Assembly: GCF_006345805.1 (NCBI RefSeq)
Contig: NC_042997.1
Coordinates: forward strand, 119,908,001 to 119,972,000
DNA length: 64,000 bases
Direction of reading: 5' to 3'
DNA from: Octopus sinensis
Taxonomy: Eukaryota
A program made the position numbers and the translations under genes. The notes beneath the pieces were generated by a model, which was not told where the DNA came from, made no database searches, and was given only the letters and a program-made list of their open reading frames with translations. Positions within the stretch are counted from its first letter, which is position 1. Each line of letters opens with the position of its first letter. This document shows, in pieces, positions 32,763-54,699 of this stretch.

Positions 32763-32906
32763 CGTGATATATAAATATATACATATATACATACATATAT
32801 GTACATACATACATGTATGTTATTATTAAGTAGGTATGTATATATATGTATGTATATAAGCATATATTTATATATTATATGATCGAACGCCACGCATCCT
32901 TTTCCA

Positions 32907-32993
<87 letters not shown>

Positions 32994-33040
32994 ATGTGTG
33001 AGTGTGTGTGTGCGTGTGTGTATATGTTTGTCTCTATGTA

Positions 33041-33076
<36 letters not shown>

Positions 33077-33414
33077 TATATATGCAAAGATATATATCGA
33101 CCTGTACATTACATTTACAAAGAAACGTATCATCGCAGGCAGGCATTGGCGTTGAGATTCATTAGAGAGAGATAAAATTAGAAACTGAATCGATGAACTA
33201 GAGGAAGGCGGGATTTTAGCATACAAGTAGATGTTGAGTGACCAGAACTAGGCATTAAATAGATCTGATTTACATTTATTTTTTCTTAATAAGTAATTAT
33301 TGTAACTCTCCATTGTCAGCAATTTTAATTATTCTTCCGGTTTAATGACTCCGACAAACCTTTGATTCAAAACATCGTAAGTTCCCAACAGTGTCTGATC
33401 ATGTGTGTGTGTGT

Positions 33415-33450
<36 letters not shown>

Positions 33451-34556
33451 AATGTTCAAAATGAACACACGAGTTGATATATATGGAAAAATGTCAAGAT
33501 AGAAAATACTAACATAATTTTGTAAAACATTTCAGTACCGGTTTCAGTCATTGAGACCTTTTTAACTGTAAGTATGGAAAACAAATAAATTTTATAATAC
33601 AGAATTAAAATGTTGATGACCTACAATATATTTTTCCCATGTTTATAATTCAATACAGTATTCTACTGTATTAGCATTCCTGTTACATCATTTGTTACGT
33701 ATACTATTACAGATTTTCTATAGAAACCATAGCCAACGCAGATTTTGTTACGACCAACCATATCAGGGCTTTCGTACACGACTCGTAGCAACAAAGTCGG
33801 TGTTGGCTGAAGAAAATATGTGAAAATACGTTAACAAACAATAAAAGAAAACCTCTATTAATAATGGTCACAAACAAATAAAACTGCTTGAGTTTCATAC
33901 ACAACGTTCATATATATAATATTATACATGTATATAAACTTTTCAGATGATGAAAATATCTTATAAAAAGGAAATAACATTGGGGATAATAATGATAAAT
34001 ATCATAAAGAGTGACTTACATTTGAAAAAGAAATTCAAGCATTGGCATTGCGGATCACAAATTTCCTGTTGAAGTTCATTCTGCTATATTTTGCTACGTT
34101 TTATTTTGTGGGGCTGTTTATTTTTCACGGATAGAGATGAATGAAGAAGTGCATTCCCCAATAACGAAATCTAAATAACTTGATATAGGCTGGTGTTATT
34201 GTGATCGGAACAATACAAGCTGAATAATATTCATAGAAAGATTTATGTGCGGCAAAACCCGTAACTTGCTCTCTGTTTAATATGTGCGTAAATGTAGAGA
34301 TCGCTTTCTTGAACACCCAACATACTGTCTGAAATATTCGCTATAACACATCACCTTATAAATATAACCAGCTGTTTCGCCAATAAAATTTTCGTTTTAT
34401 GTAATATTTCATAATAAGTTTAAAAATTGGAGCAAATATATAAAAGAAAAATAAACAAAATCTGTTACCCATGTTTAAATGCTTTAACTGACCAATGAAA
34501 CAATTATGTGATAATTGTAAACGTGGTAGGAAATTTTATAAAAGGCACCCGTTTAC

Positions 34557-34690
34557 AATTTGTAAGCAAAACATTATTATTTATCCTCCACGATGCTGTG
34601 TGGTAAGACGCTTGCTTCTCAAACGCATGATTCGAGGTTCAATCCCATTTCGTAGCACCTTTGGCAAGCGTTTTCTACTGAAAGAAGCCT
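34557..34690 (+). mobile_element. tRNA-derived SINE remnant (18241 family, internally deleted); copy at about 54552-54650
   Basis: GCTGTGTGGTAAG...GGTTCAATCCC...GCACCTTTGGCAAG...CTGAAAGAAGCC. Confidence 0.6.
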
Positions 34691-34703
34691 GCCATATATA
34701 TAG

Positions 34704-34751
<48 letters not shown>

Positions 34752-34777
34752 GTGTGTGTTTTTCCCTCTCTTGCGCC

Positions 34778-35290
34778 ATAACGTGCTTTCACTTCACTAC
34801 CGAGGGTAGATCTGTGTGCCTCGGGTATGGGCTGTGATTTGTTGTGATGCTCTGATGTTTACTGTATTGAAAGTGTTCTGCCTAGGATGTGTGCAGTTCC
34901 TAGTAGTGCAATTTTCTGTATGTTATATGTGTTTGTAAGTCCTGGTGTTTTTGTTATGTATTTGTCTGAATATTTTTTAACATGCCTAATGCACCTACTA
35001 TGATAGAGATTGTTTCTGCTTTTAGATTCCACATTCTAGTTACCTCTATTTCCAGGTCTTTGTATTTTGAGAGTTTCTCCATTTCTTTTAGAGGCACGTT
35101 GTAATCTGCTGGTATTGATACATTTGATACATCAATTAGAAAGCATTTTTTTCTTCATGATCTCTGACAACTATATCTGGTCTGTTGGCTTTAATTTCTC
35201 TATCTGTGCGTATCGCCATATCCCAGAGTATGGTTGCTTTCTCGTTTTTTCTGAGCTTTTCTGGTGTGTGCCTATACCATCTTTTTTCTG

Positions 35291-35293
<3 letters not shown>
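34778..35293 (-). mobile_element. R4/Dong family C 3' fragment on the minus strand
   Basis: Reverse complement matches about 13050-13545; adjoins (TTA)n at 35294-35370. Confidence 0.85.
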
Positions 35294-35370
<77 letters not shown>

Positions 35371-35371
<1 letters not shown>

Positions 35372-35830
35372 GTTATTCTGAGAGACTCTCGGATAGTTCT
35401 TAATTACCGGTTATTCTTTACGTGAAAGCATGAATGACAAATCACCAAATGTTTCAAGTCGTGTCTTCTCCTGTGACTGAAACAGACAATACACTCCTTA
35501 GAATGCGAACTATACCGAACGTTACCGTCTTCTTGATCACTTCGAGCCTGATAGCAACTTCAATATTCTTAATTTTTTATCAAAGCCCTTAGAAACTGCT
35601 CTGAATTCTCCAATTACCACTTGTATGACCATTATTTTTCATCATGCTCCATAACTTCCTATCTAATTCCGCAGAGGCTGGTATTACTCAATCGTTTCTG
35701 TTTTCTTGCATTTCACCCACGAAACGGCTGGTATTGTAAAATCCATTATCTTTTATTCTTATTCATCTTTTTGGATGAGCACGATATCTGGTCGTGTCGC
35801 ACTGCATGTTAAAATCCCAGAGTATTTTGC
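35371..35830 (-). mobile_element. Degenerate R4/Dong 3' fragment of another family
   Basis: Minus strand RPDIVL...IMDFTIPA...VIQVVIG resembles RLE; its 3' end joins (TAA)n on the minus strand. Confidence 0.55.
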
Positions 35831-36337
35831 AATGTTTGTTTTTCGTTACTCCCTCTGGTTTTGTTCGTAGCATTTTTCGGCTCCCCGAGCTTTGCTTTAC
35901 CACACAACAGCCAGGAGACATAAAACCACACTAAAACTACAACCACGTCATCAACTATATCAGCAACAGCATCAGAAATCTCCCAAATAACCAGAAACAT
36001 TTTAACACAAAACACCTCCCCAAGATATAACCGTCCCCTCTTCGGATACTTCAGGCATGTCTATTAATGAAGGGGGCTGTGAGAAGCTTCAATGACACAC
36101 GGTTTTCGGGGCCAAGAAATGTGGAACAAAAACACCTCAACGCCAACAAGAATAACCGGCAGATACGAACACAAGAATGATATAACTTAGAGCAACAACG
36201 CACAAATATTACCCCAACAACAGCTACATTAACATTGAACTTTGGAAATAAGGAGCACGAGTTGGTATAGACGATGCTGAGCTGTGAAGTTTGAGGGACG
36301 GGAATTAGGGAACAAGAGAATGAGGGGTATCAGAGAA

Positions 36338-36573
36338 GGCGGCGAGCTGGCAGAAACGTTAGCACGCCGGGCGAAATGCTTAGCAGTATTTCGTCTGCCG
36401 TTACGTTCTGAGTTAATATTCCGCCGAGGTCGACTTTGCCTTTCATCCTTTCGGGGTCGATTAAATAAGTACCAGTTACGCACTGGGGTCGATATAATCG
36501 ACTTAATCCGTATGTCCGTCCTTGTTTGTCCTCTCTGTGTTTAGCCCCTTGTGGGTAGTAAAGAAATAGGTAT
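36338..36573 (+). mobile_element. tRNA-derived SINE; copy at 56217-56452
   Basis: A-box-like GAGCTGGCAGAAACGTTAGC, B-box-like GAGTTAATATTCC, body GGTCGACTTTGCCTTTCATCC. Confidence 0.8.
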
Positions 36574-36879
36574 CGTTGTCGGGGGTATCTACTTTACTTC
36601 GATTCGCCCTCGATTCACTTTCCCTGTCAGCTCTACAGCATGCGACCAGAGGTAGGACTTGATTATTTGTCCATCTTGGATGCGTAAATCCTTCTCTCCC
36701 ATCTGTTTTCTCATCTTCAGTTTCGATATCATGTTTCTCCGACGAATTATCTCTCTCAGAGTGAGTATTCCTCTCGAAACTCCCAGGCATGCTTCTGAGC
36801 TCTGTTCAGGAAGGTTGAAGCCTCCTGATCAGAAGAAAAGATTACTCTTCAAAATGAAGAAGAGGCAGAACGGTTACAA

Positions 36880-37700
36880 ACCTGGCGGGAAAGTTATGAC
36901 CACAAAAATTTCAGACAAGGGGTTCCCATTTCACCTGAATTATTCACATCTCTATGAGAAAAGGTTGTTACAAACTTATAGTTGTCAGATAAACGAATAA
37001 ACAAAACGGATGCGTGTTAGATGATCTCAAATTGACTAATGTTATTCTAAACATTTCCAGGAGCATTAAAGTATCAATAGAAATACTCAGGGTAATAAAA
37101 GAAGTAAGCAAACTATGTAGACTCAGAACTAGTATTATCCAAACGAAGCTAATCTCCAATCATCTAATCGCAGTCGGAAATGTGATAGATGATGCAATAC
37201 ATCATTATAGCAACTAATACACCTATCTTCGAACTATAGTCTGCTTGAAGGAGAAAAATCGAACCAAAGACTTTGAACGACAGATAGAGTTTGTATGGGC
37301 AGACTTTGGTAAATCGAATCACGTAACGAACAATGATTTGATCATGTGTTTCAAAAAGAAAGATTTTCAACTTGTGTGTGCTGCTTACCATTACGTATTC
37401 ATCATAAGCATGGACTACAAAGAACAATATTGAAAATTAATTAAGAGCAGTGCAAAGAGCAATGGAGTGGAGAATGGCGAAGATTAACAAAACTGATGAG
37501 TGGAGAGACAGCATAAAAATAAGTGTGGTAACACGTTGATCGGTATTCTCTGAAATAGATTTTCATGGGACATGTGCTTAGAATAAAGGAGGAAAATGGA
37601 ATGGCAAATATACAGACTGGATCATACATCGTAGAAAAGGAGAGGGAAAGACCATGTAGATGTTGAAATGAAAACGTTTTTAAATTATTCGCACCCAAAT
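36880..37700 (+). mobile_element. Degenerate RTE-clade LINE RT fragment; copy at about 56760-57580
   Basis: FRQGVPISPELFT, INKNGCVLDDLKL, YTYL, RQIEFVWADFGK resemble RTE motifs VRQGDTISPKLFT, INGEYLSHLRFADD, RRIRLGWAAFGK. Confidence 0.6.
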
Positions 37701-38301
37701 TTGAATAAGAAAATCACATCAGGCCGTGTTTGGTGGAGACACCATAGTACAGCATTCGTCCAGGAGTGGACCGAAATATGTGCAAATATGATAACAGACA
37801 AAATATAAATAAAATCTTCCAAATTAGGGAGTGAATTATTCTGTGCAAGTCTTTCTTCCTCCCCTTTTTCCTTGTCATTAGTTTAATATTTTTAGATTTT
37901 ATTTTCTCTATTTGTATCAGAGTTTCTGTAGTCTGTAATGTCTTATCAGCTTTACACACACATTTGAATTGTTTAAATATATATAATAATAACAAATAAA
38001 TCCGTTCTCGAATTATTTTTATCTCATTAGAATCACTTGTGAACAGCGTATCTAGAAATCCGCTTCACATACACTGATGTTGCTACAACAGCTAAAAATA
38101 GAAAAACAATAGGAACAAGAGCCTAAAAATAGCGCTGAACTCATTGACACCGGCACTATACATCCCACAACTAGTAGTGGAGTACAAGCCCCCACACAAC
38201 GCACAAAGCACGTTCATTTCCATGGTAGCTGAACTGATTTACTCATCATCTCTAGTATAGTTATCGCGATTGTTACACTGATTATCATGATCATTCCTAT
38301 T

Positions 38302-38302
<1 letters not shown>

Positions 38303-38355
<53 letters not shown>

Positions 38356-38508
38356 AACTACTACTACTACTACATCTGCTACTGCTGCTGCTGCTGCTAC
38401 TGCTGCTGCAACTACAACTACTACTAGTAGTAGTAATAGTAGTAGTAATGCGGCTACTGTTACTACTACTACCACACCACCACCACCACCACCACCACCA
38501 CCACCACC

Positions 38509-38552
<44 letters not shown>
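38303..38552. repeat. Compound (TAC)n-(TGC)n-(CAC)n microsatellite; variant copy at about 58180-58420
   Basis: Direct inspection; source of poly-V/S/H/P ORFs. Confidence 0.9.
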
Positions 38553-39149
38553 CATCACACCAAACCACAAACAGTACAAAACCAACAACCACTTCCTGTA
38601 AGGCGAAATACACTTTGTTCCTTCACTTTCTCATTGCAGCAATACCGCTATTAACATCATCTCCACCTTATAGTAGACACCATGACATCATCATCAATTC
38701 ACAATTTACTCATTCCCACGAAAACAACTCAACCCAAATCATTTAACTCTCGCATCTGAAAAGTTTCCAGGAAGATTTGCTCTGCATCCAGACTTGGGGT
38801 TAAAGTGAAGCTTAGGAATATGCCGCTTTACTTCGCGCAAAACAACTATAACTGCAACGTAAATGTACATTCACGACTTTCCGATATGGACACATAAATA
38901 TACCCTACCTTTAGTATTAAATACTAAAACCTATATGAAACGCTACACATAGATTTTAAAAAATGGAATATGTGAAACTAGCTCACTTCTCTCTCATTGC
39001 ACATGAACTCTAAATTTTACTAAACAAGTGTGTTCCGCTCTACACACGTCAAGAATCACGAACACATCTTGAGGTGGGGTAAAACATAACAATTGCGAGC
39101 TATTTCGTCGGTGCAATCTCATTAAGGGGGCCTTCCGACAGGGGTTACA

Positions 39150-39300
39150 CTTTTACTCTTTCATTATTTTACTTGTTTCAGTTATTTGACTGTTGACATG
39201 CTGAGGCACCGCCTTCAGTCGAGCAAATCGACCCCAGGACTTATTCTTTGTAAGCCTAGTAATTATTCGATCTGTCTTTGTAAGCCTACTACTTATTCTA
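39150..39300 (-). mobile_element. SINE 3' tail fragment (18241 family); copy at about 59020-59160
   Basis: Reverse complement GGGGTCGATTTGCTCGACTGAAGGCGGTGCCTCAGCATG...CTGAAACAAGTAAA. Confidence 0.7.
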
Positions 39301-39344
39301 TAGATTGTGTATTTCTATAAATCATCATCATGGAATTTGAGTGT

Positions 39345-39620
39345 TTCCTTGGAGATACCGCATGCGATAAATATGTATTCCATCTTGTGTGTCATGGTGC
39401 AAGGTCCTCTTGTCAGACATAGAGTCTTCCAGTACCAAACCTCTTAACCCATGGCAGCATTACCTCTTCAAGGTATTTGATCAATGCCTCTATTTTGAGT
39501 CTGAGTACGCGTGGGAAGGTGAATGGAGGCATAACGTCTACGTAACTACTGACCACTCCAAAAACCATGATATTGATTGGATGTTTGATGTTTATCCCTT
39601 ACCCCATAGATGCTGGTGGC
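39345..39620 (-). mobile_element. Tc1/mariner-superfamily transposase fragment; copy at about 59210-59480
   Basis: Minus strand KHPINIMVFGVVSS..DVMPPFTFP..L...YLEEVMLPWV...V*QEDLAP*H matches the DD(x)D catalytic region. Confidence 0.7.
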
Positions 39621-39879
39621 ATATATAAAAGTACCCTTTAAGAACTGTATACTTGAAAAGTATACAACTATATCATTACACTAAAATTTGAGAAACAAAC
39701 ACTTTTTTTTTTTAAAACTTCTTTGTATGAGATTCATACCATGAAATTTCTGGAACTGAGCTCAAATACTTAAGCTTAATTAAAATATAGTTTCTTTTTT
39801 AAATAAACAATATTCATTAAGTGAATTTGTATTTAACAGCTTATTATTATGCAAAGATGATTTGTGAAAGGTAAAAAAA

Positions 39880-41060
39880 ACGGGAAACTTATACAGAGTT
39901 ATCAAGGCTTATTACCTAGAATTCCTTAGATAAAAAATACAAAAGCACTATAGGATTACCGGTAAAAGTGCAATCAGGACCGCCAACCCTGAGACTAATA
40001 AAATTATGGAGAAATATGTCTTACAGATGAAGATAAAATCACTTGGTCCCAACAAGCTCCTTTCATTATAAAGGCTCACAAATCAAAATTATGAATTCAA
40101 TGTCCTTCTAGATCTGATATCAATATATTTAGCAAAAATATTCTAGATAATTATATACCTACCTTAATTAAAAAAGTTAAAGCGTAATTTATGGTCTAAT
40201 TCGTTTTAAATGGTCGTCATGTCAATTCTATCGATAAAAAGAAGCGCACTAGCTTCATCCAGTTTGACATTTCTAGTTTCTGTTCCTCTATTAACCCAAC
40301 TGTACTGAACAAGGCACTCTGACTTTCACACAAGAAAGCAGGTCTCACCAGAGATGAATTCAATGTCGTGTTAGCTGCCAGAAAATATATTCTTAAATTT
40401 CATAACAAGCTGTGCGTCCGTAAAGATACGTCGGACTCTTTGATGTCACGATGGAAAGTTCTCATTCAGCATGAATCGCTGTAGAAAAGAATTTTTCCCA
40501 GAATTCAAGATACTATTCGATTATTCGTTCACACCGAATCGGGATAGGGCTTTCTAACGCCTACTCTTTTAATACGTGATAAACGTAGGGACATTCATAT
40601 TTTTAATACCAACCATTCTTTAAATATTAATAGCCTCATTGTTAGTGTTTCGGATGTGGATTCCAATCGCATTCGATTCCTTGTCAATAATCTTAAGATT
40701 AGAAATTCTATTTATGAATGTAAAATTACTTCCGGTTCTGACGTCTGTTTTTATATTGGTAGTTCATCATCTCAGTTGTCCAAAATAATATTTATTCATT
40801 ACCCTACATTTATACATATCAATTATCGTGACAATACTGGGTTGAGAGCTTAGTAAATTCGTTTAGTCTCTAAAGGATCATAGTAAAGTATATGATTTGG
40901 AATGGAATATTCTATCTAAATCATTTCCGTATGATAAAAGTAAATATATTTGTTCTAGTAATGATGAAATGTCTTTCCTCCTGTTCTTAGAGAATCATCT
41001 TGTAAACAAGTTAAAAGAACGCGCTTTTCGTTGCAATCAATGGTAAAGACATACCTTTAG
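39880..41060 (+). mobile_element. Degenerate Penelope-like element (RT plus C-terminal GIY-YIG), internally deleted; copy at about 59745-60940
   Basis: SFIQFDISSF, ARKYILKF, FDVTM, SIYECKIT...FYIGS, YDLEWNIL; same type as 48241-52100. Confidence 0.7.
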
Positions 41061-41666
41061 TTCATATAAGTGATTTCTACCATTCTATAAAAATCGACAT
41101 TTAACTGTCTTTTTACATTTCAATGCCACTAATTATATTTGTTTTCATGCATGTAAAATTTATTCCTATTTACCTCTCGCACTATATTTCAACACTTTTA
41201 ATCTTCTGTTAATTTCTTTCTTCCTCCTACTCTTTCTGTAAATTTCCTTTGGCGTTATATATATTAACGGTTTTTTTTTAAATAACTTTCCAGCGTCCCC
41301 TTCATTTTATATGCTGTAATCACATTCGGTTAAAATGTCTTATTAATGAGTTTGTTTTCTTTTGTTTCCTGATGAGGAGACTGATTTGTTTTACATCATT
41401 TTATTCCTTCTGGAATAATACCATAAAACATATGTCGGAAGTATAAAGATTTGAATAACACATACATTTAACACAATTTATTTTTTAAACTATTTTAATC
41501 AAAAACATTTCACCAAAACCTGGATTTTTTATCTTTATTAGTGGGCGGTTACAGCCTTGGTACTTGTGTGAATTTTTGCTACCCTGGCAGCTATTTATTT
41601 ATCTTTTTCTCTGTTATTTGCAAGCTTTGAAATATACACATAAATTCATATGCATACATATCTATC

Positions 41667-41744
<78 letters not shown>

Positions 41745-41751
41745 CTATCTA

Positions 41752-41828
<77 letters not shown>

Positions 41829-41924
41829 TTATATATATCGCCATGTTGATTCGCTAGCCTCTGCACGCATCTTTTCTCACCTTTTTTTCTCTCCTTGTTT
41901 CTTTCTGTGTTTCTTTTCTGTATA

Positions 41925-41962
41925 TCTTTCTGTTGAAGAGCGTAGGCTCGAAACGTAAAAGA
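41925..41962 (+). ncRNA. Minimal type I hammerhead-like motif in a short (TA)n-associated repeat
   Basis: Stem I TCTTT/AAAGA, core CTGTTGA (A6 to U) plus A, stem II GAGC-GTAG-GCTC, GAAA, palindromic ACGT stem III, GUA cleavage site. Confidence 0.55.
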
Positions 41963-42058
41963 CTTGTTTTATTTATATTCCTGAGCGCCATACTAATACA
42001 ATTATTTGTTTGTATTCCACCTGCCTACGTCTTTTGATTATTTTCATAAAGCTTCCCG

Positions 42059-42133
<75 letters not shown>

Positions 42134-42675
42134 TGTATGTCTGTATATATGCATGAATTTATGTATGTATGTGTGTATGTATTTGCATCCATCTAATGAC
42201 AAGCATAATTAATAATACTATAACGTATAAAATCTTTTTTAGGAAAAACCATGTAGAATTTCATCAACCAATACAATGTAAATTCGTAAATTATGCTTAT
42301 CAATTATCTTACTTCTTTTCACACTGCTTTAACACCCTCTTTCCTCATTATTATATTCAAACTTTTATTAATAATCTTTACGTATACTCGGTGAGCATGC
42401 AAAATCATTTGCTCGTGATGCAAATACGCTATGCAGTATTTCTACTGACATTACGCTCTGTGTTCAACTTCTCCCATGATCTGATTTGCTTGCACATCTC
42501 TTGAGGATCTATTCAAATAATTAAACATGAAGACTTGGGATCGATATTATCAACTAACAGCCTGCCACTAAATTTCATGTATTGTTCCTGAAATTGGTAC
42601 TAATCTTGTGTATTAATAATTGTGTCTCACTTGGTCTATAAAAAATAAAGTTTTCAACGGAATTCAGAAGTTTCG

Positions 42676-43853
42676 TTATTTCAAAACTTTTCTCGTTGCA
42701 ATGGGGTGATTCATGCGTTTATTTAAATCGTTCCACAGTTTGTACATAATTTCGGTTTGAGGTACATGGTAAATAGCAATCTTTCTTTTGATCTCCTTCG
42801 AAATTTCATGCAAGGAATTACTAACACCAAATATATAGGCCGAATCATAGTTGGTATGTTTTATACCTAATGCATTGACTAGCATACCAGTTACATAAAC
42901 ATCATCGACCCAAAAACGCGGAACTTTTAACGAAATTTTGAGTAAACGGACAGGCATGTCAGGGCTCAAGATATAAGCAGATCCTGAGCAATAAACTTCA
43001 AAAGTTTTATTCGGATATTCTTCAGGTGAAACATACCACTTACTCTCTTTGTTTCTGAGGACTGGCATTCCTTCCCATACATTACACAATATAAATTTTT
43101 TCCGAGCGTATTCGTACTGTTGTAGATATCTCAAATGTTTTACCACTTGAAAAATGTCGATTAATATATCATCATCTGTTTTCATTATATATGAGATATT
43201 GTGGCAGTTTGTTGCAATCCAGCGCAACGCTGTCATTGCTTTGGAATTTAAGTTCCGATACGTGTCGTTGAATTCAGTCTGTAATATGTCATTGTAACGG
43301 GCAGATTCTACTTTGACCATATCCATAACATGACGGTTGTTGACGACACCCATCACAAATAGTAACTTGGTTTTAAATTTACCCAACACTTTCTTGTCGC
43401 CCCATGTTTGCCGTATTGCCATTCGTCGCTTAGAGTTTCTGGTGCTGCGTGAATATAAACAATCATAAAATCATCAGGTACACATAATAAAGAAGGCTTA
43501 ATTATGTGATGTGTGTAATAAGGCAGCTCTTTTTCTGGCAACAACGACCATGAGGAGCTGTTCCTAAGTGAATTTTGAACTTTCAGAACCTCATTTCCTT
43601 TTGACTGTAAACCACCATAGACTGTTAATGATAAAACACGTACTAATGAACTATCAGTTTTCTTCTTATGTATATTTTCATCAATCGTGATATTGTTATC
43701 TCTGGCATTATCCCTCATTTTACGCATTTCAATCTCTTGCCGTGAAATCTTAAGTCGTTCCTTTGTAGAATTTACATGAAGAAGAAGGTAAATTGAAGAG
43801 ATGATTAGCAAGAGGAGAAGCATGTGGAATCTTCTGGATCGGCGCAGCAACAT
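42676..43853 (-). pseudogene. GT31 galactosyltransferase paralog 2; 1-nt deletion at about 43437/43438 (pseudogene or sequencing error); chimeric
   Basis: ORFs 43353-43853 and 42676-43422 join into a full protein if one C is restored (TAGAGTTCTCTGG in paralogs 1 and 3, TAGAGTTTCTGG here). Confidence 0.8.
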
Positions 43854-44309
43854 TACTGCCGTATTTCATTATATGTAGAGCCTTTTGCTTTAGAAAATTC
43901 ACTTCAAATTCAATACCAATTTGAACTGTAATAAGAAAATGAAAAGAATTTTGTGAAACAAATCAAATTAATATTCGTGATTATAGGTATAAATACATAT
44001 ATGCTTATATATTCACATATATATGCATACACACATACATGCATACACACATACAGGTATACATATATATTTTTATAACTTGGTGCATGCTCGATGTCGC
44101 TCTCAACCACATTTTTACTTTCAAACAATATATATATGTGTATATATGTATGTGTATGTGTGTGTATATGTGTGCATGAAGATATGTATGCATACGTATG
44201 GTACCAATGATAGAAAATGTATTCCATTCAAAGAGAGATATACATACTACACTGCGGAAGAATTTCCATTTTTGTCTATTGATTTAAATTTAACAGCTAA
44301 TTCGAGGTA

Positions 44310-45580
44310 ATTCGTATGCGCATGCTCTCTCAGTTCCTGATTTTGTTTAAATACACATTGTATCGAGATCCCAGATTTCGACACTGCGACGACATCTGCG
44401 GCATTCATGTGAAATCCCTATTCCGCATGCCACTTGTAGAGGTAGATCAAGATATTTCAGAGAATGTTGTTATGATCTCTGAGACGTGTGACACTGATTT
44501 TGATCTGAGCGGTTTGAAAATCAAAATGATCCGCAAAAGCCTAACTACGCAGTGTTGAATGATCTTCTAAAGGATCTAGATTTTCTAAAAAAGCTGCGGT
44601 AATTTTAGCTTCAAAATTTAGAGAGAAAAAATGCTTAATTAATCAAACATATACATTACATTGTTTTATTGAAAAATTATTAAGAGTTAAATAAAAATCA
44701 TCTTTGTTTGGTAGTATATATATATACACACAGTAGGAGATATATTGAATAGTTTACAAATAATAGTTTCGTACAGAGGAGAGTTTCGTATATTGCGACA
44801 AAGTACCTGGTTTGTTACTGGAGATGGGGGTTGAGTCTTACGATACAAATGAGGGCATCTGTTTTAAAGGAAAACAATTCTGAAGTGTGCATTACTGCAT
44901 AATGGCAATCTATATGGCTCGTTACCGATTGGGTACTCAAAAAATATTAGAGAAAATTATTCACATACAGAGAAGTTTTTAAATCTTATTAATATATGAC
45001 CGGATCGCATGTGTTCAATTAAAATTGTTAGTTTTCTGCTCGGACAAAAGCAGTGTACATTAAATATCCCTGTTTCCTTTGCTTATGGGTCAGCGGAGCC
45101 AAGGAAGACTATTATTTCTAACAAATCTGACCAGCAGAAACATCGCTTACTCTCGTAGAAAGAAAAAAAGAGTACAATATGTAAAAGCTTTTGATACGAT
45201 CGGCTTGTGTTTCAAATTCTTATGGTATCAAAGAAAGGTTGCGATTTTCCTAATGTCATGAATGAATGCGAACAAAATGCCTGGTTCTTATTCATGGAAT
45301 TGATAGAAAACTTTAGAGGGAAATCAAAGGGCAGATAACTACGAAGTAATCATGAAAATAAACGAAATCACTTTTTAAATTACTACACAGAGTTAGGGTG
45401 CAATATATTTTAGATAGTCTTCTTGACGAATTCCCAAGTAATATAAGCTCTGTAAATGACGGACAACTGGAAAGATTCCACCAAGATATGAGAATTGTGG
45501 AGTAACAGTATAAAGGATACTGGGATTCCAGCATGATGGCTGATTACTGTTTCATTAGTATGTTTGGTTAGATTGCTTGA
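44310..45580 (+). mobile_element. Chapaev-3-like transposase remnant, duplicated copy
   Basis: Near-identical to 28500-29760. Confidence 0.65.
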
Positions 45581-46182
45581 TAAGTGAGCTGCCATCAACA
45601 ATCACATGCGCTAGAAAGTTTTATGAAAGAAAAGTTTCAGCAGAGTGAAAGCTGGATGCTGACATATTTTTCCACTTTGTATGAATATTTTATCCCGTTT
45701 CTGCTGTTCTATCCGCATTTGTGCATTTGAAATATATTATTATCTTATTTTTAACTCACAATAAATACTTCAGCGCTTCAAAGGCGAACGTGCTTTCTAT
45801 GTAATGTCCCAACAATGTTTTTTACCTCATCATACCTTCTATCATATAATTTTTATATATATTTTATGTATATTTTTTATATATTTTTTTATGTATTTTT
45901 ATATAACTTTTTATGGCGAAAAATGCGAGTGAAGATGTGTACGTTTACATAGCGATGTAGTTACAACACACAGTAATCTCCCTTTGTATAACGGTTTTTT
46001 TCATAGCGTTTTCAAATAGCCAGATAACCGAAGAGATGGCGTTGTGGATTCCCACTTCGGCATCTGAAACTCAAAGTTTTATCTTGACTATCGAGTAATG
46101 TAACATATTATTTTATAGATAAATTTCCTCTATTTACATAATATTGAGGTCTCTCTCTTTCTTTTCTTATCTTACCGTTTTA

Positions 46183-46248
<66 letters not shown>

Positions 46249-46434
46249 CATTATTTACATAATTTACATTTGATTGACGGATGTTTGTACTTATCTTGTC
46301 TCATGTTAACACAAATTTGCGACTGATACGGCTGATATATCCTCGAGGCTTCGTCAGGTGTCTTGCGGAAATTTCGAACACTGGTTCTCATACATAATGT
46401 ATTTTTCGATGTTATAACATAATAATAATAATAA

Positions 46435-46509
<75 letters not shown>

Positions 46510-46510
<1 letters not shown>

Positions 46511-47002
46511 GAAAAGGTCACAGAAAACGAGAAAGCAACCATACTCTGGGATATGCCGACACACAGATAGAGAAATTAAGGCCAACAGACCAGATATAAT
46601 TGTCAGAGATCATGAAGATAAAAAATGCTTTCTAATTGATGTATCAATACCGGCAGATGACAACGTGTCCTCTAAAGAAATGGAGAAACTCTCAAAATAC
46701 AAAGACCTGGAAATAGAGGTAACTAGAATGTGGAACCTGAAAACAGAAACAATTCCTATCATAGTAGGTGCAGTAGGCATGGTAAAAAAATATTCAGACA
46801 AATACATAACAAAAACACAGGACTTACAAACACATATAACATACAGAAAATTGCACTACTAGGCACTGCACACATCCTACGCAGAACACCTTCCATACAA
46901 TAACCATCAGAGCATCACCACCACAATCACAGCACATACCCAAGGCACACAGAGCTGCGCTCGGTAGTGAAGTGAAAGCACGCTATAAAAATAAAACTAC
47001 TG
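46510..47002 (+). mobile_element. R4/Dong family C 3' fragment, duplicated copy
   Basis: Near-identical to 30686-31179, with small deletions. Confidence 0.88.
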
Positions 47003-47021
47003 AATAATAATAATAATAATA

Positions 47022-47062
<41 letters not shown>

Positions 47063-47224
47063 TAATAATAATAATAATAATAATAATGTTAATAGAACTA
47101 GTAATTCGAAATTTTCCCAAGACCCCTGAATGCTGGATGTATTTCAGGATAGGGATAAATATACTTTAAATGTAAAGAATGTAAACAATGTACCTAATTC
47201 CTCATCTCTAAATATAGATCTGTG

Positions 47225-47284
<60 letters not shown>

Positions 47285-48193
47285 ACCTTAATATCCAAGA
47301 CCGGCACATGCAGTTAAATTATGATAGAAACACTCAAATGCCAGCACATTCGAAATCAGGAAAAATATATATATATATATAAACTCCAGCGTAGTTTAAA
47401 ATAACAGTTCACAATATATAAATATCTGATAACGGCAATTGACTTTACCCTCTAAACTACACATAAACTTAAGAACACAAAAATCTACTAACTTCTAAGG
47501 ACAACAGTGTTAGCTAATTAAAATATAAAAGAATTAAAAACCAATATACAATCCCCTAAAACTAATATGGCTCACAATATCAGATAAATTTCAATGAAGC
47601 CTCTAAAGATATGTCAAAATTAAAATTAAAATTACCCTAACACTACCCTAACACTAACCCTAACCCTAACCCTTCTTCATTGTCCCTGTTTCATCTACTC
47701 CACGTTCGAAGGTAAGGACAAGAAGCGACTTCTTTGAAACAGTCCTTCCCGCAAAGCAAATTGAATAATATTTGGGACTTTTTGCGAAGGGGTAAAAGTG
47801 GTAACAAGAACAGAGTAAGAAAAAAAAAAACAAGACGGTAAAAACAATAAAAGTAAAAACAGTAAAAGTCAGAACAAAGAGAATAACACTGTGTCAACTC
47901 CAGCATCGGGACCAACTTCAAGCGACTATTAAGGCACGCTAGAAAACACTGCTCCTCTAAAGGAAATCTTACCTGTCATTGAGGTTTGTCAGACAAAGAC
48001 AAGCAGTTGGCCACTCTAGAAAGCACACAGTAAATGCTCCACAAGCATCCAAACAGAATCAGTCCTCAATTCCTTTCATATGGTAAAACGTTTTCAAGGC
48101 ACCAGCACGCCAGAAGAAACACATTCGTGTCCATAGAACATGAATAAGGCTTTATTTTACCTAACCCTCATTTGTCTTTCACGAGATGAGAAT

Positions 48194-48240
<47 letters not shown>

Positions 48241-48241
<1 letters not shown>

Positions 48242-51200
48242 CTTTTCAGCAAGAATGGAAAAAAAATAAACTTCGAGTTTTCCCCTAAAGACTTCCCCCT
48301 CCATAGTAAAGATGAGTATTATTGGCTACTCATTCACAGGATAAACGATTTCATTAGAAGGATTAGATGGAGAACATACCACTTCGATATCAAACATAGA
48401 AGAATACGAAACGAAGGATTACTAATAAGAAGTTCGACGGAATATTTAGAAGCAGGAGAGCCCACCTCCAAATCCACTCCTTGATAATTTTGAAAAAGAC
48501 CTACTCAACCTCATAGAAAGAATTAAATTCAAGGATCACCCGTTAAGATATAATCACCACCTCAAGCATCTCAGTAAATTTATAAAATCAACTCGAAACA
48601 AGAAAGGAATTTTAGTACCAGCTGACAAAACGGGCAATTTTTATAGAGTAGACTATTCACTCTACAGCATTCTAATTAACAAGGAGCTTAACTCCAAATA
48701 CAAAACTACTACCAAAGGAAAGTTGAAGGAAACTAACTTAGAAATGAAAGCTATTATGGAAAAATATGATCTAGCAGACAGAACTGAACCAATTGTACCA
48801 TGCGAACCTAGGATTAATCTTAAGGACCATAAAAAGAATTTTCTGGAAAACCCGTCGGTAAGACTTATTTGCCCAACTAAGTCGGATATTGGCCGACTTA
48901 GTAAATCTATCCTAGATAATATCTTACCCCAAATAACCCCACTTCTTCCCTTAAGCCTGTGGATAAATACCGATGAGGTCCTTAAATGGTTTAATTCCCT
49001 AACTAATACGAATAATTTAGCCTTCATTCAATTCGATATAAATAACTACTACTCTAGCATTTCCCCTATCCTACTAAATAAATCGCTTATATTCGCGATG
49101 AATCGCTCCCTCATATCTAGAGAAGAAATAGACATTATACTTTTAGCTAGAAAAACATTTATTGAATTTGAGGGAAAATTATGAGCCAGAGCTGATACCC
49201 CTAACTTTTTCGATATTCCTATGGGCTCAAGTGATTCGGCTGAGGTAACCAATTTAGTAGGAGCATATCTACTGAAATGCATTAATAAAGAGATCCCTGA
49301 ATTGCAAGGTGGTCTATATAGAGATGATGCTTTGTTTGTTGTAAATACCAATAATAAATCACACATAGAAAGAATTAAAAAGAAGATTAATAGGTTCTTT
49401 AAAGATTTCAACCTTAGCATAACCTATGAACCAAACATTAAAATAGCTAATTTTCTAGATATTACTTTAGACCTTAACTCCAAACTACATTATCCATTTA
49501 GAAAGGAAGGGGAAATCACTAGTTACGTAAATAAATTATCTAATCATCCCCCAAATATAATAAATTCCTTAGATAGAAATATTTCCATAAGAATATCCAA
49601 ATTATCATCTAATTTTAATATATTTAACTCACACTCAGGACATTACAATGAGGCGTTATCTAGAGCAGGATATAACCAGAAAATTACTTTTGAAGATAAG
49701 GAAAAACTAGGAACTCATCATAATAATTTAAGTAAATTAAACAGCAATAACCACATAAATAACAAAAATGATCAAGTCGAAAAGATACATAGATGTGGAT
49801 CTAATACAACATCTAATCGTAATGATAAGTATAAGGATAAATACATAGACCATAACACAGATAGCCCTGATAAGGCAACCTTAAATAAAATAAAAATTAA
49901 GAAACACACTATTAGTAACATAGACAACAACAATGACCATACCAGAAAGGATAGTAGAAATAGATTTACAACGGCAAGTACCCTAATGATATTAAGAATA
50001 TTAATAAAAACATAACAGAGAGATACTTATAATAAGGGTAAAATAAACTTGGATAAAACTAGCAAACATGCTAACAGGAACATTAATAAGTACAAAGAAT
50101 CTGATGATGGGACGATTAATTCTAATAACCCTAACTCTAGTGGGAAAAATTCTAGCAGCCCTAACTCTAATTCTAAGAAATTTAATAAGAAAACATAATA
50201 TGGCTAAACATCCCTTTTAACTGTGCGGTTTCATCAGATATTCAGGGTAGATTCAAAACAATTCTAGAAAATAATTTCCCATCCTCTCATAGATATCATA
50301 AAATTATTTCTAAAAAAACAGTCAGAATTTCTTATTCAACTCTCCCAAATATGTCCACTTTAATAGCTAAGATCAATAATAATAACATAAAACTAGCCAG
50401 AAATAATTTAATAAATAAAAATAAAAATACAACGGAAAATTGTAATAACAGTACGAAAAGTAATAATTGCAACAATAATAATAATAACAATAATGAATGT
50501 CATAAAATAAATATAACCAAAAGCCATGGAATTGTTAATAACAATAATAACATAAATAGGAATGATTATGTTAGTAATAGGAATAATACCATGAATGTAA
50601 GTACAGTGAATGAGAGTAACAACATTATCAGCAACAACACTACACATCTGGATAACAATATCGACAACAATACTAATAGCATCAACAATATCAGCAATGA
50701 TAGTAGAGTTATAGAACCAAACGATAGTGTAGGAATACCGACAAATGATAATACTACTTTAGAAGATAACATCAACTGCAATAATGATAACATTATTTTA
50801 GATAGCAGCACCAGCACACAATAATAATAATAATAATAAAGTAGGGCTTTAGAACCAAATGAAAATGTAGGAATACCTATAAATGATAATACTGTTTTAG
50901 ATAATAATATTAACTACAATAATGATAGAGTTCTTTAGATAATAACAATAATCAAAATCATGATAAATTTACCCGCTCTGCTTCGAGCAACAGTAATATA
51001 AGACTTCAATCCTCAAGGTATTCCACCTCTAATTATAATGCCCCTAGATGTAACTGCAGAATTAAATCAAAATGCCCGGCCCCTGATTTATGCGGGTTAA
51101 TTAACATAATCTATAAGTGCTCCGTAACCACAGATAATAATAAGTTCTCTTATGTTGGATGCACTGTAAATTTTAAACAGAGATTGAATAACCATCTCTC

Positions 51201-52100
51201 ATCTTTTAAATTACGTCATAAGGCTGATAGCACTACTCTTTCTAGTAAAATTTGGGAACTAAAAAACAATAATATCAAATATAACCTTAATGGGAATTAG
51301 TCAGAAGAGCAAAACCCTATAAATAGCAGAGTAGGCTGCCAACTTTGCTCCATGGAAGCATTTGAAATACTAATGTATAAAAATAATGGAGAAATTCAAT
51401 TAAACAGCAGAATTGAACTTGGAAATTCTTGTATACATGCTCGGTTTAAGACTCTTAAATATTTTAAATGATATTTTAAATCATATCTCAATTGATAACT
51501 GTATACTGGAATCATTTTACATAAAATTCATTTTGACTTACATATCACTCCTACATAGTATATTATATATTTAAATATATTTAACTGGAAAGATAAGTTC
51601 TAACTAGCTATGATTATAATTTCTTCTCTCTCTGATGGTACTATTTAATACTTATTGACTTAAATTATTTGATTTATTTCTATTGGACCATATTATTAAT
51701 AAATTAAATTTTGCTCTATTTTTATCTCCATTTCTTAGTCTATTTTTTATCCCATTACAAATATTAGTTAGTTAATTCTCTTAATTTCTTTTAAACTTTA
51801 AAAATTAATTCTGCTAATACCAGACCTATCGTAGTGTATTGTGATGTGATATAATATATCAAAATAATATAATATAATATAGTGTAGTGTATTATAGTTT
51901 AGTATAATAATAATATAATTGTTTAATTTCATTTAAAAACATTATGTATGTATTATAGTTTAGTATAATAATAATATAATAGTTTAATTTCATTTAAAAA
52001 CAACCCCATTTTTCTTTCCTTTCTAATGACCTCTTTGTAACCTGACAATCTATTAATAGTAACATAAACGGAGTTTATGATTCATGTGTGAGTGTGTGTT
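48241..52100 (+). mobile_element. Near-full-length Penelope-like element (RT plus C-terminal GIY-YIG; resembles the Hydra clade), ORF about 48255-51471 with frame disruptions
   Basis: VPADKTGNFY, LKDHKKNFLENPSVRLICPTKSDIG, IQFDINNYY, MGSSDSAEVTNLVG, LYRDD, FLDITL, IWLNIPF, ISYSTLPNM, IIYKC..YVGCT..FKQRLNNH, CQLC; follows (TA)n; 3' end approximate. Confidence 0.88.
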
Positions 52101-52107
52101 CTTGATA

Positions 52108-52590
52108 CTCGTTTAGAACAAGTAGTTTTACACCAATTACACTATTTTTTCTTAGTTTAAAGGCCGTGGACTGAAGATGTGAAATTTCCGAAGCCTCTCC
52201 CCCACCCCCTTTCGCGAGCGCGCATTTTTTCATGATAGTCGTTTAGAGCAAGTTGTTTTACACCTATTACGCTGTTTTTGTTTTTGTTTTTGTGCCCGGT
52301 TCAGACGCTTTCGGAAATTCCCGATATAAATATTCCGAGGCCTCTCCCCCACCCCTCTTTCTCGAGAGCGCATTTTTTTTTTCATATTCGTTTAGAGCAA
52401 GTTGTTTTACACATATTACACTATTTTGTTTTGTTTTGGTGCCCGGGTCAGCCCCTCAGACGCTTTCGGAACTTCCCGATGTGATTTTTCCGAGGCCTCT
52501 CCCCAACCCCCCTTTCGCGTGCGCGAATTTGTTTTTCATATTCGTTCATAGGAAGTTGTTTTACACCTATTACACACATTTTTTTTTTGA
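52108..52590. repeat. Imperfect ~150-bp tandem repeat (three copies plus a partial copy)
   Basis: Units start at about 52176, 52323 and 52478 (TTCCGAGGCCTCTCCCC...TCGTTTAGAGCAAGTTGTTTTACAC); absent from the first duplicated unit. Confidence 0.85.
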
Positions 52591-52627
52591 TTTTCTGATA
52601 TTTGTTACGCCCTATATTAACCCGTGG

Positions 52628-52663
<36 letters not shown>

Positions 52664-52865
52664 CGTAATATATAAATATATACATATATACATACATATA
52701 TGTACATACATACATGTATATTATTATTAGAAGTAGGTATGTATATATATGTATGTACATAAGCATATATTTATATTATATATGATCGAATGCCACGCAT
52801 CCTTTTCCATATCTATCTATCTATCATCTATCTATCTATCTATCATCTATCTATCTATCTATCTA

Positions 52866-52930
<65 letters not shown>

Positions 52931-52988
52931 ATGTGTGAGTGTGTGTGTGCGTGTGTGTATATGTTTGTCTCTGTGTATGCATATATAT

Positions 52989-53040
<52 letters not shown>

Positions 53041-54699
53041 TATATATGCAAAGATATATATCGACCTGTACATTACATTTACAAAGAAACGTATCATCGC
53101 AGGCAGGCATTGGCGTTGAGATTCATTAGAGAGAGATAAAATTAGAAACCGAATCGATGAACTAGAGGAAGGCGGGCTTTTAGCATACAGGTAGATGTTG
53201 AGTGACCAGAACCAGGCATTAAATAGATCTGATTTACATTTATTTTTTTCTTAATAAGTAATTATTGTAACTCTCCATTGTCAGCAATTTTAATTATTCT
53301 TCCGGTATAATGACTCTGACAAACCTTTGATTCAAAACATCGTAAGTTCCCAACAGTGTCTGATCATGTGTGTGTGTGTGTATGTGTGTGTGTGTGTGTG
53401 TGTACAATGTTCAAAATGAACACACGAGTTGATATATATGGAAAAATGTCAAGGTAGAAAATACTAACATAATTTTGTGAAACATTTCAGTACCGGTTTC
53501 AGTCATTGAGACCTTTTAAACTGTAAGTATGGAAAACAAATAAATTTTATAATACAGAATTAAAATGTTGATGACCTACAATATATTTTTCCCATGTTTA
53601 TAATTCAATACAGTATTCTACTGTATTAGCATTCCTGTTACATCATTTGTTACGTATACTATTACAGATTTTCTATAGAAACCATAGCCAACGCAGATTT
53701 TGTTACGACCAACCATATCAGGGCTTTCGTACACGACTCGTAGCAACAAAGTCGGTGTTGGCTGAAGAAAATATGTGAAAATAAGTTAACAAACAAATAA
53801 AAGAAAACCTCTATTAATAATGGTCACAAACAAATAAAACTGCTTGAGTTTCATACACAACGTTCATATATATAATATTATACATGTATATAAACTTTTC
53901 AGATGATGAAAATATCTTATAAAAAGGAAATAACATTGGGGATAATAATGATAAATATCATAAAGAGTGACTTACATTTGAAAAAGAAATTCAAGCATTG
54001 GCATTGCGGATCACAAATTTCCTGTTGAAGTTCAATCTGCTATATTTTGCTACGTTTTATTTTGTGGGGCTGTTTATTTTTCACGGATAGAGATGAATGA
54101 AGAAGTGCATTCCCCAATAACGAAATCTAAATAACTTGATATAGGCTGGTGTTATTGTGATCGGAACGATACAAGCTGAATAATATTCATAGAAAGATTT
54201 ATGTGCGGCAAAACTTGTAACTTGCTCTCTGTTTAATATGTGCGTAAATGTAGAGATCGCTTTCTTGAACACCCAACATACTGTCTGAAATATTCGCTAT
54301 AACACATCACCTTATAAATATAACCAGCTGTTTCGCCAATAAAATTTTCGTTTTATGTAATATTTCATAATAAGTTTAAAAATTGGAGCAAATATATAAC
54401 AGAAAAATAAACAAAATCTGTTACCCATGTTTAAATGCTTTAACTGACCAATGAAACAAATATGTGATAATTGTAAACGTGGTAGGAAATTTTACAAAAG
54501 GCACCCGTTTACAATTTGTAAGCAAAACATTATTATTTATCCTCCACGATGCTGTGTGGTAAGACGCTTGCTTCTCAAACGCATGATTCGAGGTTCAATC
54601 CCATTTCGTAGCACCTTTGGCAAGCGTTTTCTACTGAAAGAAGCCTGCCATATATATAGATATATATATATGTGTGTGTGTGTGTGTTTGTCCCTCCCT

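What the first reader, a model, noticed from the sequence alone, without database searches (positions are those of the whole stretch)
42676..43853. Middle galactosyltransferase gene is a chimera with a switch point in a 69-bp interval
Seen: paralog 2 follows paralog 1 in its upstream flank and through VPRFW (A at 42915, as at 27114; paralog 3 has G at 62797). It follows paralog 3 from NYDSAY onward (T at 42845, as at 62727; paralog 1 has C at 27044) and in its downstream flank. A few upstream sites match paralog 3, so the mosaic may be more complex. Inference: unequal crossover between ancestral paralogs 1 and 3 duplicated the ~16-kb spacer and created a new hybrid enzyme. Alternative: the assembler placed two haplotypes in tandem.
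Basis: partly seen in the sequence, partly recalled or inferred. Interest (0 to 1): 0.7.

Follow-up and report, generated by a model that had tools for sequence, protein, structure and literature searches.

The report
Hybrid octopus galactosyltransferase gene from unequal crossover
The middle of three tandem octopus beta-1,3-galactosyltransferase genes really is a hybrid of its two neighbours, made by an old unequal crossover that a sister species also carries, but this is a textbook way of making gene copies and in this assembly the hybrid has a frameshift.

Summary
The window is Octopus sinensis chromosome CM016859.1. It holds three single-exon GT31 (PF01762) genes on the minus strand: G1 26872-28053, G2 42676-43853 and G3 62558-63727. 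A three-way alignment gives one breakpoint, between 42845 and 42915. To its left, 72 of 76 informative sites have G2 matching G3. To its right, 59 of 66 have G2 matching G1 (maximum chi-square 101; 0 of 10,000 permutations reach it). The few discordant sites are later private mutations in G1 or G3, not extra mosaicism. High identity runs on from the switch point through the whole 15.8/19.9-kb units, which is the signature of unequal homologous crossover between G1 and G3. The independent Octopus vulgaris assembly has the same three genes, the same switch interval and the same 4.4-kb unit-B-specific segment. The event is therefore real and predates the species split (~2.5 Mya), and the haplotype-misassembly alternative is rejected. 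G2 in this assembly has a private 1-bp deletion at codon 139, just before catalytic motif I, so it encodes no full enzyme here. The O. vulgaris hybrid ORF is intact (392 aa). The deletion may be real or an assembly error. This is an ordinary mechanism and a new example of a known kind.

The parts
26872..28053 (-). G1, parental paralog 1: intact single-exon GT31 beta-1,3-galactosyltransferase-like gene, 393 aa
   Evidence: ORF. PF01762 E = 6e-50. The exact protein is on record in O. sinensis GCA_006345805.1 CM016859.1.
42676..43853 (-). G2, the hybrid gene. Codons 1 to about 314-336 are G1-type (cytoplasmic tail, membrane anchor, stem, GT31 motifs I-IV). About the last 57 codons are G3-type. 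In this assembly it is split by a frameshift into ORFs 43353-43853 (166 aa) and 42676-43422 (248 aa).
   Evidence: The 248-aa piece is the protein annotated at NCBI (P0004).
42846..42914 (.). Switch interval: 69 bp identical in all copies, encoding W-VDDVYVTGMLVNALGIKHTNY, which includes GT31 motif V
   Evidence: Site patterns. Maximum chi-square breakpoint. Motif V definition from PMC8022947.
43437..43438 (-). Site of the G2-private 1-bp deletion (codon 139, GAG to GA-), immediately 5' of motif I RRMAIRQTW. It is absent from G1, G3 and all O. vulgaris copies.
62558..63727 (-). G3, parental paralog 3: intact GT31 gene, 389 aa
   Evidence: ORF. PF01762 E = 4e-49. Exact protein on record.
27114..42914 (.). 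Duplicated unit A (15.8 kb): 5' four-fifths of G1, spacer, and 3' fifth of the hybrid
   Evidence: Self-comparison. Four-way alignment with O. vulgaris.
42915..62796 (.). Duplicated unit B (19.9 kb): 5' four-fifths of the hybrid, spacer, and 3' fifth of G3
48212..52632 (.). Unit-B-specific segment of about 4.4 kb; unit A has about 345 bp here (32385-32730). The same A/B difference is present in O. vulgaris.
   Evidence: Window 48212-52065 is 98.5% identical to L003:33476-29633.
43926..43945 (-). Candidate 3' splice site (polypyrimidine tract plus AG at 43927-43926), 72 nt upstream of the ATG. It suggests an upstream non-coding exon.
   Evidence: Read directly from the sequence. This is inference only.

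Best explanation
In an ancestor of O. sinensis and O. vulgaris, two tandem GT31 paralogs lay about 16 kb apart in the same orientation. These were G1 and G3, about 4% diverged in the 5' coding region and about 9-10% in the 3' end and flanks. They mispaired, and a crossover occurred inside a stretch of identical coding sequence that includes catalytic motif V. The duplication product carries G1, the spacer, a hybrid gene, a second copy of the spacer, and G3. The hybrid has G1's upstream flank and first ~314-336 codons, and G3's last ~57 codons and downstream flank. It is the same kind of product as an anti-Lepore haemoglobin gene. The junction is in frame with no indel, so the event yielded a full-length hybrid GT31 protein. 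That protein is still an intact 392-aa ORF in O. vulgaris. The two units later acquired a 4.4-kb difference, before speciation, and kept exchanging sequence within each species. In the O. sinensis assembly the hybrid carries a private 1-bp deletion that would truncate the protein before the catalytic domain. Shown here: the hybrid structure, the single breakpoint, the duplicated units, presence in two species, and the frameshift as assembled. Inferred: crossover as the mechanism, the order of later events, and the functional state.
For: Self-comparison: units are 96.7-97.0% identical (gaps counted) against 90.4% for G1 versus G3. There is a single breakpoint with chi-square 101 and 0 of 10,000 permutations reaching it. 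Segment trees: on the left, G2 and G3 of both species form a 100% clade that excludes G1. On the right, G1 and G2 form a 100% clade that excludes G3. O. vulgaris locus L003 has G3v (389 aa), G2v (392 aa, intact, same switch interval) and G1v. G2-lineage substitutions are shared by both species at 43101, 43161, 43233 and 43764, and G1-lineage ones at 43493 and 43661. The unit-B-specific 4.4 kb is shared by both species. The O. vulgaris assembly is independent: ONT plus 10x plus Hi-C, with purge_dups applied. The species split is dated about 2.5 Mya (PMC10700109). GT31 identity: PF01762, motifs I, II and IV present and the invertebrate form of motif V, and human B3GALT5 8zwp as closest solved structure at E = 2.5e-30.
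Against: No read-level or depth data for O. sinensis could be reached, so this assembly's own copy number and the frameshift are unverified. Outside the indel zone, informative spacer sites group the two units within species (55) more often than by unit across species (17). Within O. sinensis the units differ by only 0.73% in substitutions, against about 1.4% between species. This means later homogenisation has overwritten much of the original signal, and the present switch point need not be the original crossover point. The 3' half of O. vulgaris G1 lay outside the fetched locus, so left-side G1 markers rest on O. sinensis alone. Whether O. bimaculoides lacks the middle copy could not be settled, because 11 kb between its two copies was not seen.
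Confidence: 0.85

Rival explanations
1. Older three-gene array plus gene conversion. Three full paralogs already existed, and long conversion tracts later overwrote G2's 5' part from G1 and its 3' part from G3. On this reading the switch is a conversion boundary, not a crossover junction.
For: Exchange between the units is evidently ongoing. Fifty-five sites are shared by both units within a species, against 17 shared by a unit across species. As-Bs divergence is 0.73%, below the orthologous divergence of 1.36-1.47%. O. bimaculoides copies also cluster within their species although P0002 is the positional ortholog of G1.
Against: Near-identity extends without a break from the switch through 5.9 kb on one side and 8.8 kb on the other, covering the whole unit. 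Conversion tracts of that length amount to an unequal exchange. No remnant of a third, older sequence type is seen in G2. All 14 G2-private sites are single changes, 4 of them shared with O. vulgaris.
Confidence: 0.1
2. Assembly artefact. The assembler laid two haplotypes of one G1-spacer-G3 locus in tandem and joined them across the homologous genes.
For: Units A and B differ by only 0.73% in substitutions in O. sinensis, which is within the range of heterozygosity. The O. sinensis assembly has a raised BUSCO duplicate fraction of 5.2% (PMC10700109).
Against: The same three-gene, two-unit structure is present in the independent O. vulgaris assembly. It has the same switch interval, the same 4.4-kb unit-B-specific segment and shared G2-specific substitutions. 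That assembly came from a different species, specimen and sequencing technology, and had purge_dups applied. There are no N gaps in the window or in L003.
Confidence: 0.02
3. Independent, parallel unequal crossovers in O. sinensis and O. vulgaris after they split.
For: Most informative spacer sites group the two units within a species. In the left segment G2v groups weakly (67%) with G3v.
Against: It would require the same 69-bp switch interval, the same 4.4-kb insertion in unit B only, and the same G2-specific substitutions (43101, 43161, 43233, 43764) to arise twice.
Confidence: 0.02

Closest known systems
Anti-Lepore haemoglobin genes (beta-delta fusion flanked by intact delta and beta), the duplication product of unequal crossover (my own knowledge)
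   Same: Two tandem, same-orientation paralogs mispair. The duplication product keeps both parents and places an in-frame hybrid between them, with the intervening spacer duplicated. There is a single switch point inside shared sequence.
   Different: Here the product appears fixed, or at least shared, in two species and is at least about 2.5 My old, rather than being a rare human allele. The spacer is 16 kb, and later homogenisation between units is seen.
Hybrid genes in other tandem arrays made by non-allelic homologous recombination: red/green opsin hybrids, CYP11B1/CYP11B2, glycophorin GYPA/GYPB hybrids (my own knowledge)
   Same: Hybrid coding sequences arise by exchange within highly similar tandem paralogs. 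Array copy number changes by whole units.
   Different: Those examples are known through phenotypes. Here no function or expression has been shown, and one of the two species' copies is frameshifted as assembled.
Animal GT31 B3GALT-related enzymes (B3GALT1/2/5 group; closest solved structure human B3GALT5, PDB 8zwp)
   Same: PF01762 domain, single coding exon, N-terminal hydrophobic anchor, motif I RRMAIRQTW, DxD (KTDDD) and motif IV GSAYILS.
   Different: Motif V is DDVYVTGML, one residue longer than the vertebrate (E/D)DVxxGx(W/C) form and lacking the final C/W. Many invertebrate homologues share this form. Donor and acceptor specificity are unknown.

Membership tests
GT31 beta-1,3-glycosyltransferase (Pfam PF01762 Galactosyl_T) | Significant match to the family profile above the curated cut-off | tested here: met
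   G1 170 bits, G3 168 bits and the G2 248-aa piece 165 bits, against a cut-off of 23. The G2 N-terminal 166-aa piece has no match.
GT31 beta-1,3-glycosyltransferase (Pfam PF01762 Galactosyl_T) | Motif I (R/A/L)(R/A)xx(I/V/A)xx(T/S)W, DxD motif II and motif IV GxxYxxS (PMC8022947) | tested here: met
   RRMAIRQTW, KTDDD and GSAYILS are present in G1, G3 and O. vulgaris G2. In O. sinensis G2 the frameshift falls 3 codons before motif I, so no single reading frame joins the membrane anchor to the motifs.
GT31 beta-1,3-glycosyltransferase (Pfam PF01762 Galactosyl_T) | Motif V (E/D)DVxxGx(W/C) | tested here: inconclusive
   The sequence is DDVYVTGML: one extra residue before G, and L in place of W/C. 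The same form occurs in many mollusc and arthropod homologues. It is probably a lineage variant, but activity is untested.
GT31 beta-1,3-glycosyltransferase (Pfam PF01762 Galactosyl_T) | Galactosyltransferase activity and beta-1,3 linkage | not testable with these tools
   This needs an enzyme assay. The database names ('beta-1,3-galactosyltransferase 1-like') are by homology only.
Hybrid gene from unequal (non-allelic homologous) crossover, duplication product | Hybrid matches one parent on one side of a single point and the other parent on the other side, flanks included | tested here: met
Hybrid gene from unequal (non-allelic homologous) crossover, duplication product | Both parental genes retained, in direct orientation, with the whole intervening segment duplicated head to tail | tested here: met
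   G1 and G3 are intact. Units 27114-42914 and 42915-62796 are collinear.
Hybrid gene from unequal (non-allelic homologous) crossover, duplication product | Junction lies in sequence shared by the parents, at homologous positions, with no gain or loss of bases | tested here: met
   A 69-bp identical interval with no indel at the junction. The only G2 indel in the coding sequence is 520 bp away and private to O. sinensis.
Hybrid gene from unequal (non-allelic homologous) crossover, duplication product | Pre-duplication state (two genes, one spacer) or the reciprocal deletion found in relatives or in the population | tested here: inconclusive
   O. bimaculoides shows two copies beyond G0, but 11 kb between them was not retrievable.
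False duplication (haplotypes assembled in tandem) | The structure is absent from independent assemblies or individuals | tested here: not met
   The structure is present in O. vulgaris GCA_951406725.2, with the same junction and the same unit-specific insertion.
False duplication (haplotypes assembled in tandem) | Half read depth over both copies, and no read spanning the junction | not testable with these tools
   No reads are available. No near-identical proteins from read-level (Logan) assemblies are in the collection.

The most novel reading that the evidence does not exclude
The hybrid is a working enzyme in O. vulgaris, and in O. sinensis too if the 1-bp deletion is an assembly error. 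It would combine G1's stem and most of its catalytic domain with the ancestral-type C-terminal 57 residues that G1 itself has since changed heavily. It would then be a recombination-made glycosyltransferase variant retained for over 2.5 My in an array that may be transcribed from a shared upstream exon.
Probability: 0.3. Interest if true: 0.4.

Novelty: new member of a known kind. Interest (0 to 1): 0.27.

Why it matters
This is a clean, dated example of unequal crossover expanding a glycosyltransferase array in a cephalopod. Both parents, the hybrid and the duplicated spacer are all preserved, and a sister species carries the same structure. It is useful as an annotation correction. The O. 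sinensis middle gene is annotated as a 248-aa protein. The O. vulgaris models fuse neighbouring copies. It also flags that tandem GT31 copies in octopus undergo concerted evolution, which confounds orthology calls. It does not change how new genes are understood to arise.

Tried and rejected
1. Independent read-level evidence. Exact-sequence and cluster look-ups of G1, G3, the G2 pieces and the O. vulgaris ORFs found only the two reference assemblies and no contigs from sequencing runs.

2. Dating the duplication from the cluster of 91 'unit-specific' sites at 32054-33054. I rejected this because the sites come from aligning non-homologous sequence across the 345-bp versus 4.4-kb replaced segment.

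3. Using O. bimaculoides as the pre-duplication state. This was inconclusive. Its two copies are 31 kb apart with 11 kb unseen. The L006 copy has an X/Y-like upstream flank and a Z-like downstream flank, so it cannot be assigned to G2 or G3.

4. Recovering the 3' half of O. vulgaris G1. It lies just past the end of L003 and has no gene model to look it up by.

5. Pfam on ORFs of the unit-B-specific segment and other spacer ORFs. Nothing was found except weak zf-RVT hits far from the genes.

6. A more complex mosaic. I rejected this because secondary breakpoints are not significant and the discordant sites are private mutations.

Full report
**What the window is.** The exact proteins of the two flanking genes are on record on chromosome CM016859.1 of assembly GCA_006345805.1. 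Another protein from the same 213,406,131-bp contig is named Octopus sinensis by its source, and PMC10700109 gives GCA_006345805.1 as the O. sinensis assembly. The spacing of the two genes in the record equals that in the window. The window is therefore about CM016859.1:119,908,001-119,972,000, plus strand. It is AT-rich, full of microsatellites, and has no N.

**The three genes.** All are single open reading frames on the minus strand, and all match Pfam PF01762 (Galactosyl_T, CAZy family GT31) far above the cut-off.
- G1: 26872-28053, 393 aa.
- G3: 62558-63727, 389 aa.
- G2: 42676-43853, the middle gene.

They carry GT31 motif I (RRMAIRQTW), the DxD motif (KTDDD), motif IV (GSAYILS) and an invertebrate-type motif V (DDVYVTGML). 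The closest solved structure is human B3GALT5 (8zwp, E = 2.5e-30). Its alignment runs to residue 375, so the swapped C-terminal part belongs to the folded catalytic domain.

**Checking the observation.**
- *Repeat structure.* Self-comparison shows 26470-32382 matching 42253-48212 at 96.7%. It shows 35339-44137 matching 55219-63991 at 97.0%. G1 (26470-28334) matches G3 (62135-63991) at only 90.4%. G2 is therefore close to both neighbours, while the neighbours are not close to each other.
Of 142 substitution sites where G2 sides with one neighbour, 72 of the 76 left of 42845 are G3-like. Of the 66 right of 42915, 59 are G1-like.
- *Statistics.* A maximum chi-square scan puts the single best breakpoint between these two sites (chi-square 101.3). 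No permutation out of 10,000 exceeded 21.3. Neither side has a significant second breakpoint.
- *Trees.* Maximum-likelihood trees of the two segments are incongruent with 100% support each.
- *Verdict.* The 69-bp switch interval is real. It encodes W-VDDVYVTGMLVNALGIKHTNY, which includes motif V, and it is one of the longer stretches of G1/G3 identity.

**The discordant sites.** I polarised them with O. vulgaris.
- The four G1-like sites on the left (42327, 42702, 42727, 42729) are private to O. sinensis G3.
- The G3-like sites on the right are changes on the G1 lineage. Three are private to O. sinensis G1 (43315, 43605, 43772), and two are shared by G1 of both species (43493, 43661). Two more, 43264 and 43639, could not be polarised.
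- They are interleaved with concordant sites, and they are about as numerous as G2's own private changes. They are ordinary divergence after the event, not a finer mosaic.

**Is it an assembly artefact?** No. The protein search found O. vulgaris relatives. Their locus L003 (54 kb of OX597814.1, GCA_951406725.2) is collinear with the window and holds the same three genes and two units.
- The O. vulgaris middle gene has the same G3-like left side, the same G1-like right side and the same switch interval.
- It shares G2-specific substitutions at 43101, 43161, 43233 and 43764.
- Its unit B carries the same extra segment of about 4.4 kb (48212-52065 is 98.5% identical to L003:33476-29633).
- That assembly was made from a different species and specimen with nanopore, linked reads and Hi-C, and was collapsed with purge_dups (PMC10700109).
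- The event therefore predates the split of the two species, put at about 2.5 Mya in that paper.

**Mechanism.** Near-identity begins at the switch point and continues through the whole unit on both sides. The segment from inside G1 to the homologous point inside G3 (15.8 kb) is therefore what was duplicated. The junction falls at homologous positions with no base gained or lost. This is what unequal homologous crossover between G1 and G3 produces on the duplication chromosome: G1, spacer, hybrid, spacer, G3. The hybrid has G1's upstream flank and its first ~314-336 codons, and G3's last ~57 codons and downstream flank.

**Later history.** Outside the replaced segment, 55 informative spacer sites group units A and B within a species, 17 group a unit across species, and none support the third arrangement. 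Substitution distances are:

| Pair | Distance |
|---|---|
| A-B within O. sinensis | 0.73% |
| A-B within O. vulgaris | 1.49% |
| Orthologous units between species | 1.36-1.47% |

. The units have therefore kept exchanging sequence since speciation, most strongly in O. sinensis, unless short-read polishing blurred the copies. O. bimaculoides copies also cluster within their own species, even though P0002 shares unique downstream sequence with G1. Concerted evolution thus looks like a long-term habit of this array. As a result, the present switch point may not be the exact original crossover point.

**The hybrid 'enzyme'.** G2 in this assembly lacks one base that all other copies have. On the coding strand CCAGAGAAC has become CCAGAAAC, at codon 139, three codons before motif I.
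- The frame from the start codon ends after 166 residues, with no Pfam match.
- The 248-aa downstream ORF, which NCBI annotates, lacks the membrane anchor. A product without the anchor would not enter the secretory pathway (inference).
- O. vulgaris G2 is an intact 392-aa ORF with all motifs.
- Changes on the G2 lineage are 3 nonsynonymous to 1 synonymous before speciation. They are 3 to 3 in O. sinensis and 6 to 1-2 in O. vulgaris, so no purifying selection is evident.
- The deleted base is not in a homopolymer. However, the O. sinensis units carry 20 private 1-bp deletions against 6 in O. vulgaris over the same alignment. A residual consensus error is therefore a live possibility, and I put real versus error at about even.

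**Comparison with what is known.** This is the duplication-side product of non-allelic homologous recombination, like anti-Lepore haemoglobin and the hybrid opsin, CYP11B or glycophorin genes (my own knowledge). A literature search for octopus, galactosyltransferase and tandem found no description of this locus. It is a new example of a known kind.

Noticed in passing
window 28054-42675 versus 43854-62557, with L003: Units A and B share 55 species-specific substitutions, against 17 unit-specific ones. They are only 0.73% diverged within O. sinensis, against about 1.4% between species. This points to ongoing gene conversion between the units after speciation, or to cross-polishing of repeats in the assembly.
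   Followed up: partly
window 62558-63727 (G3): O. sinensis G3 has about 10 private nonsynonymous changes and 1 synonymous change relative to O. vulgaris G3. O. vulgaris G3 shows the reverse, about 1-2 to 5-6. This could be relaxed or positive selection on G3 in O. sinensis.
   Followed up: no
window 26872-27045 (G1 codons 337-393): G1's C-terminal tail carries a dense cluster of derived amino-acid changes (DIIRKRIIHHLPETE versus DIKRKIAIYHVPQTE, plus a one-codon insertion). G2, G3, the older paralog G0 and O. bimaculoides mostly keep the other form. The hybrid therefore restores an ancestral-type tail on a G1 body.
   Followed up: partly
window 48212-52632: A unit-B-specific 4.4-kb segment with three plus-strand ORFs (48723-49184, 49221-50015, 50351-50824) and no Pfam hit. 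One ORF contains LYRDDALFV, which resembles a reverse-transcriptase YxDD motif. It is possibly a decayed retroelement inserted after the duplication and before speciation. O. vulgaris unit B is about 8 kb longer again at the same place.
   Followed up: partly
window 43926-43945 (-), and the same position upstream of G1 and G3: A polypyrimidine tract plus AG lies 72 nt upstream of the ATG. NCBI's O. bimaculoides names treat two paralogs 37 kb apart (P0003, P0002) as isoforms X1 and X2 of one gene. An O. vulgaris model (P0001) runs from G3 into G2. The array may be transcribed from a shared upstream exon with alternative terminal coding exons.
   Followed up: no
L003:10001-44207 and L004:10001-26331 (O. 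vulgaris): The deposited O. vulgaris gene models are faulty. P0001 fuses most of G3 with a fragment of G2. P0008 truncates the older paralog G0. The genomic ORFs are intact (389, 392 and 404 aa).
   Followed up: yes
L006:13069-14238 (O. bimaculoides): The second O. bimaculoides copy has an in-frame stop at about codon 107 (DSSS*EELPYY). The annotated 299-aa protein P0005 avoids it with an intron. It is probably a pseudogene or a mis-modelled gene.
   Followed up: partly
L004:9827-11041 (O. vulgaris), about 54 kb beyond G1, outside the window: A fourth, older paralog (G0, 404 aa, about 13% nucleotide divergence from G1-G3). It is orthologous to O. bimaculoides P0003. The GT31 array is therefore larger than the window shows.
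   Followed up: partly
window 13034-13648, 30597-31262, 46419-47084; inverted at 34778-35360 and 54706-55257: A dispersed repeat of about 570 bp (88-97% identity) sits in both orientations inside each unit. It overlaps an ORF with a weak zf-RVT match (12651-13466), so it is a retroelement fragment. The inverted pairs within a unit could promote rearrangement.
   Followed up: no
window units A and B versus L003: Private 1-bp deletions are three times as frequent in the O. sinensis copies as in the O. vulgaris copies (20 versus 6). This suggests residual indel errors in the O. sinensis assembly and calls for caution about single-base frameshifts in its annotation.
   Followed up: partly
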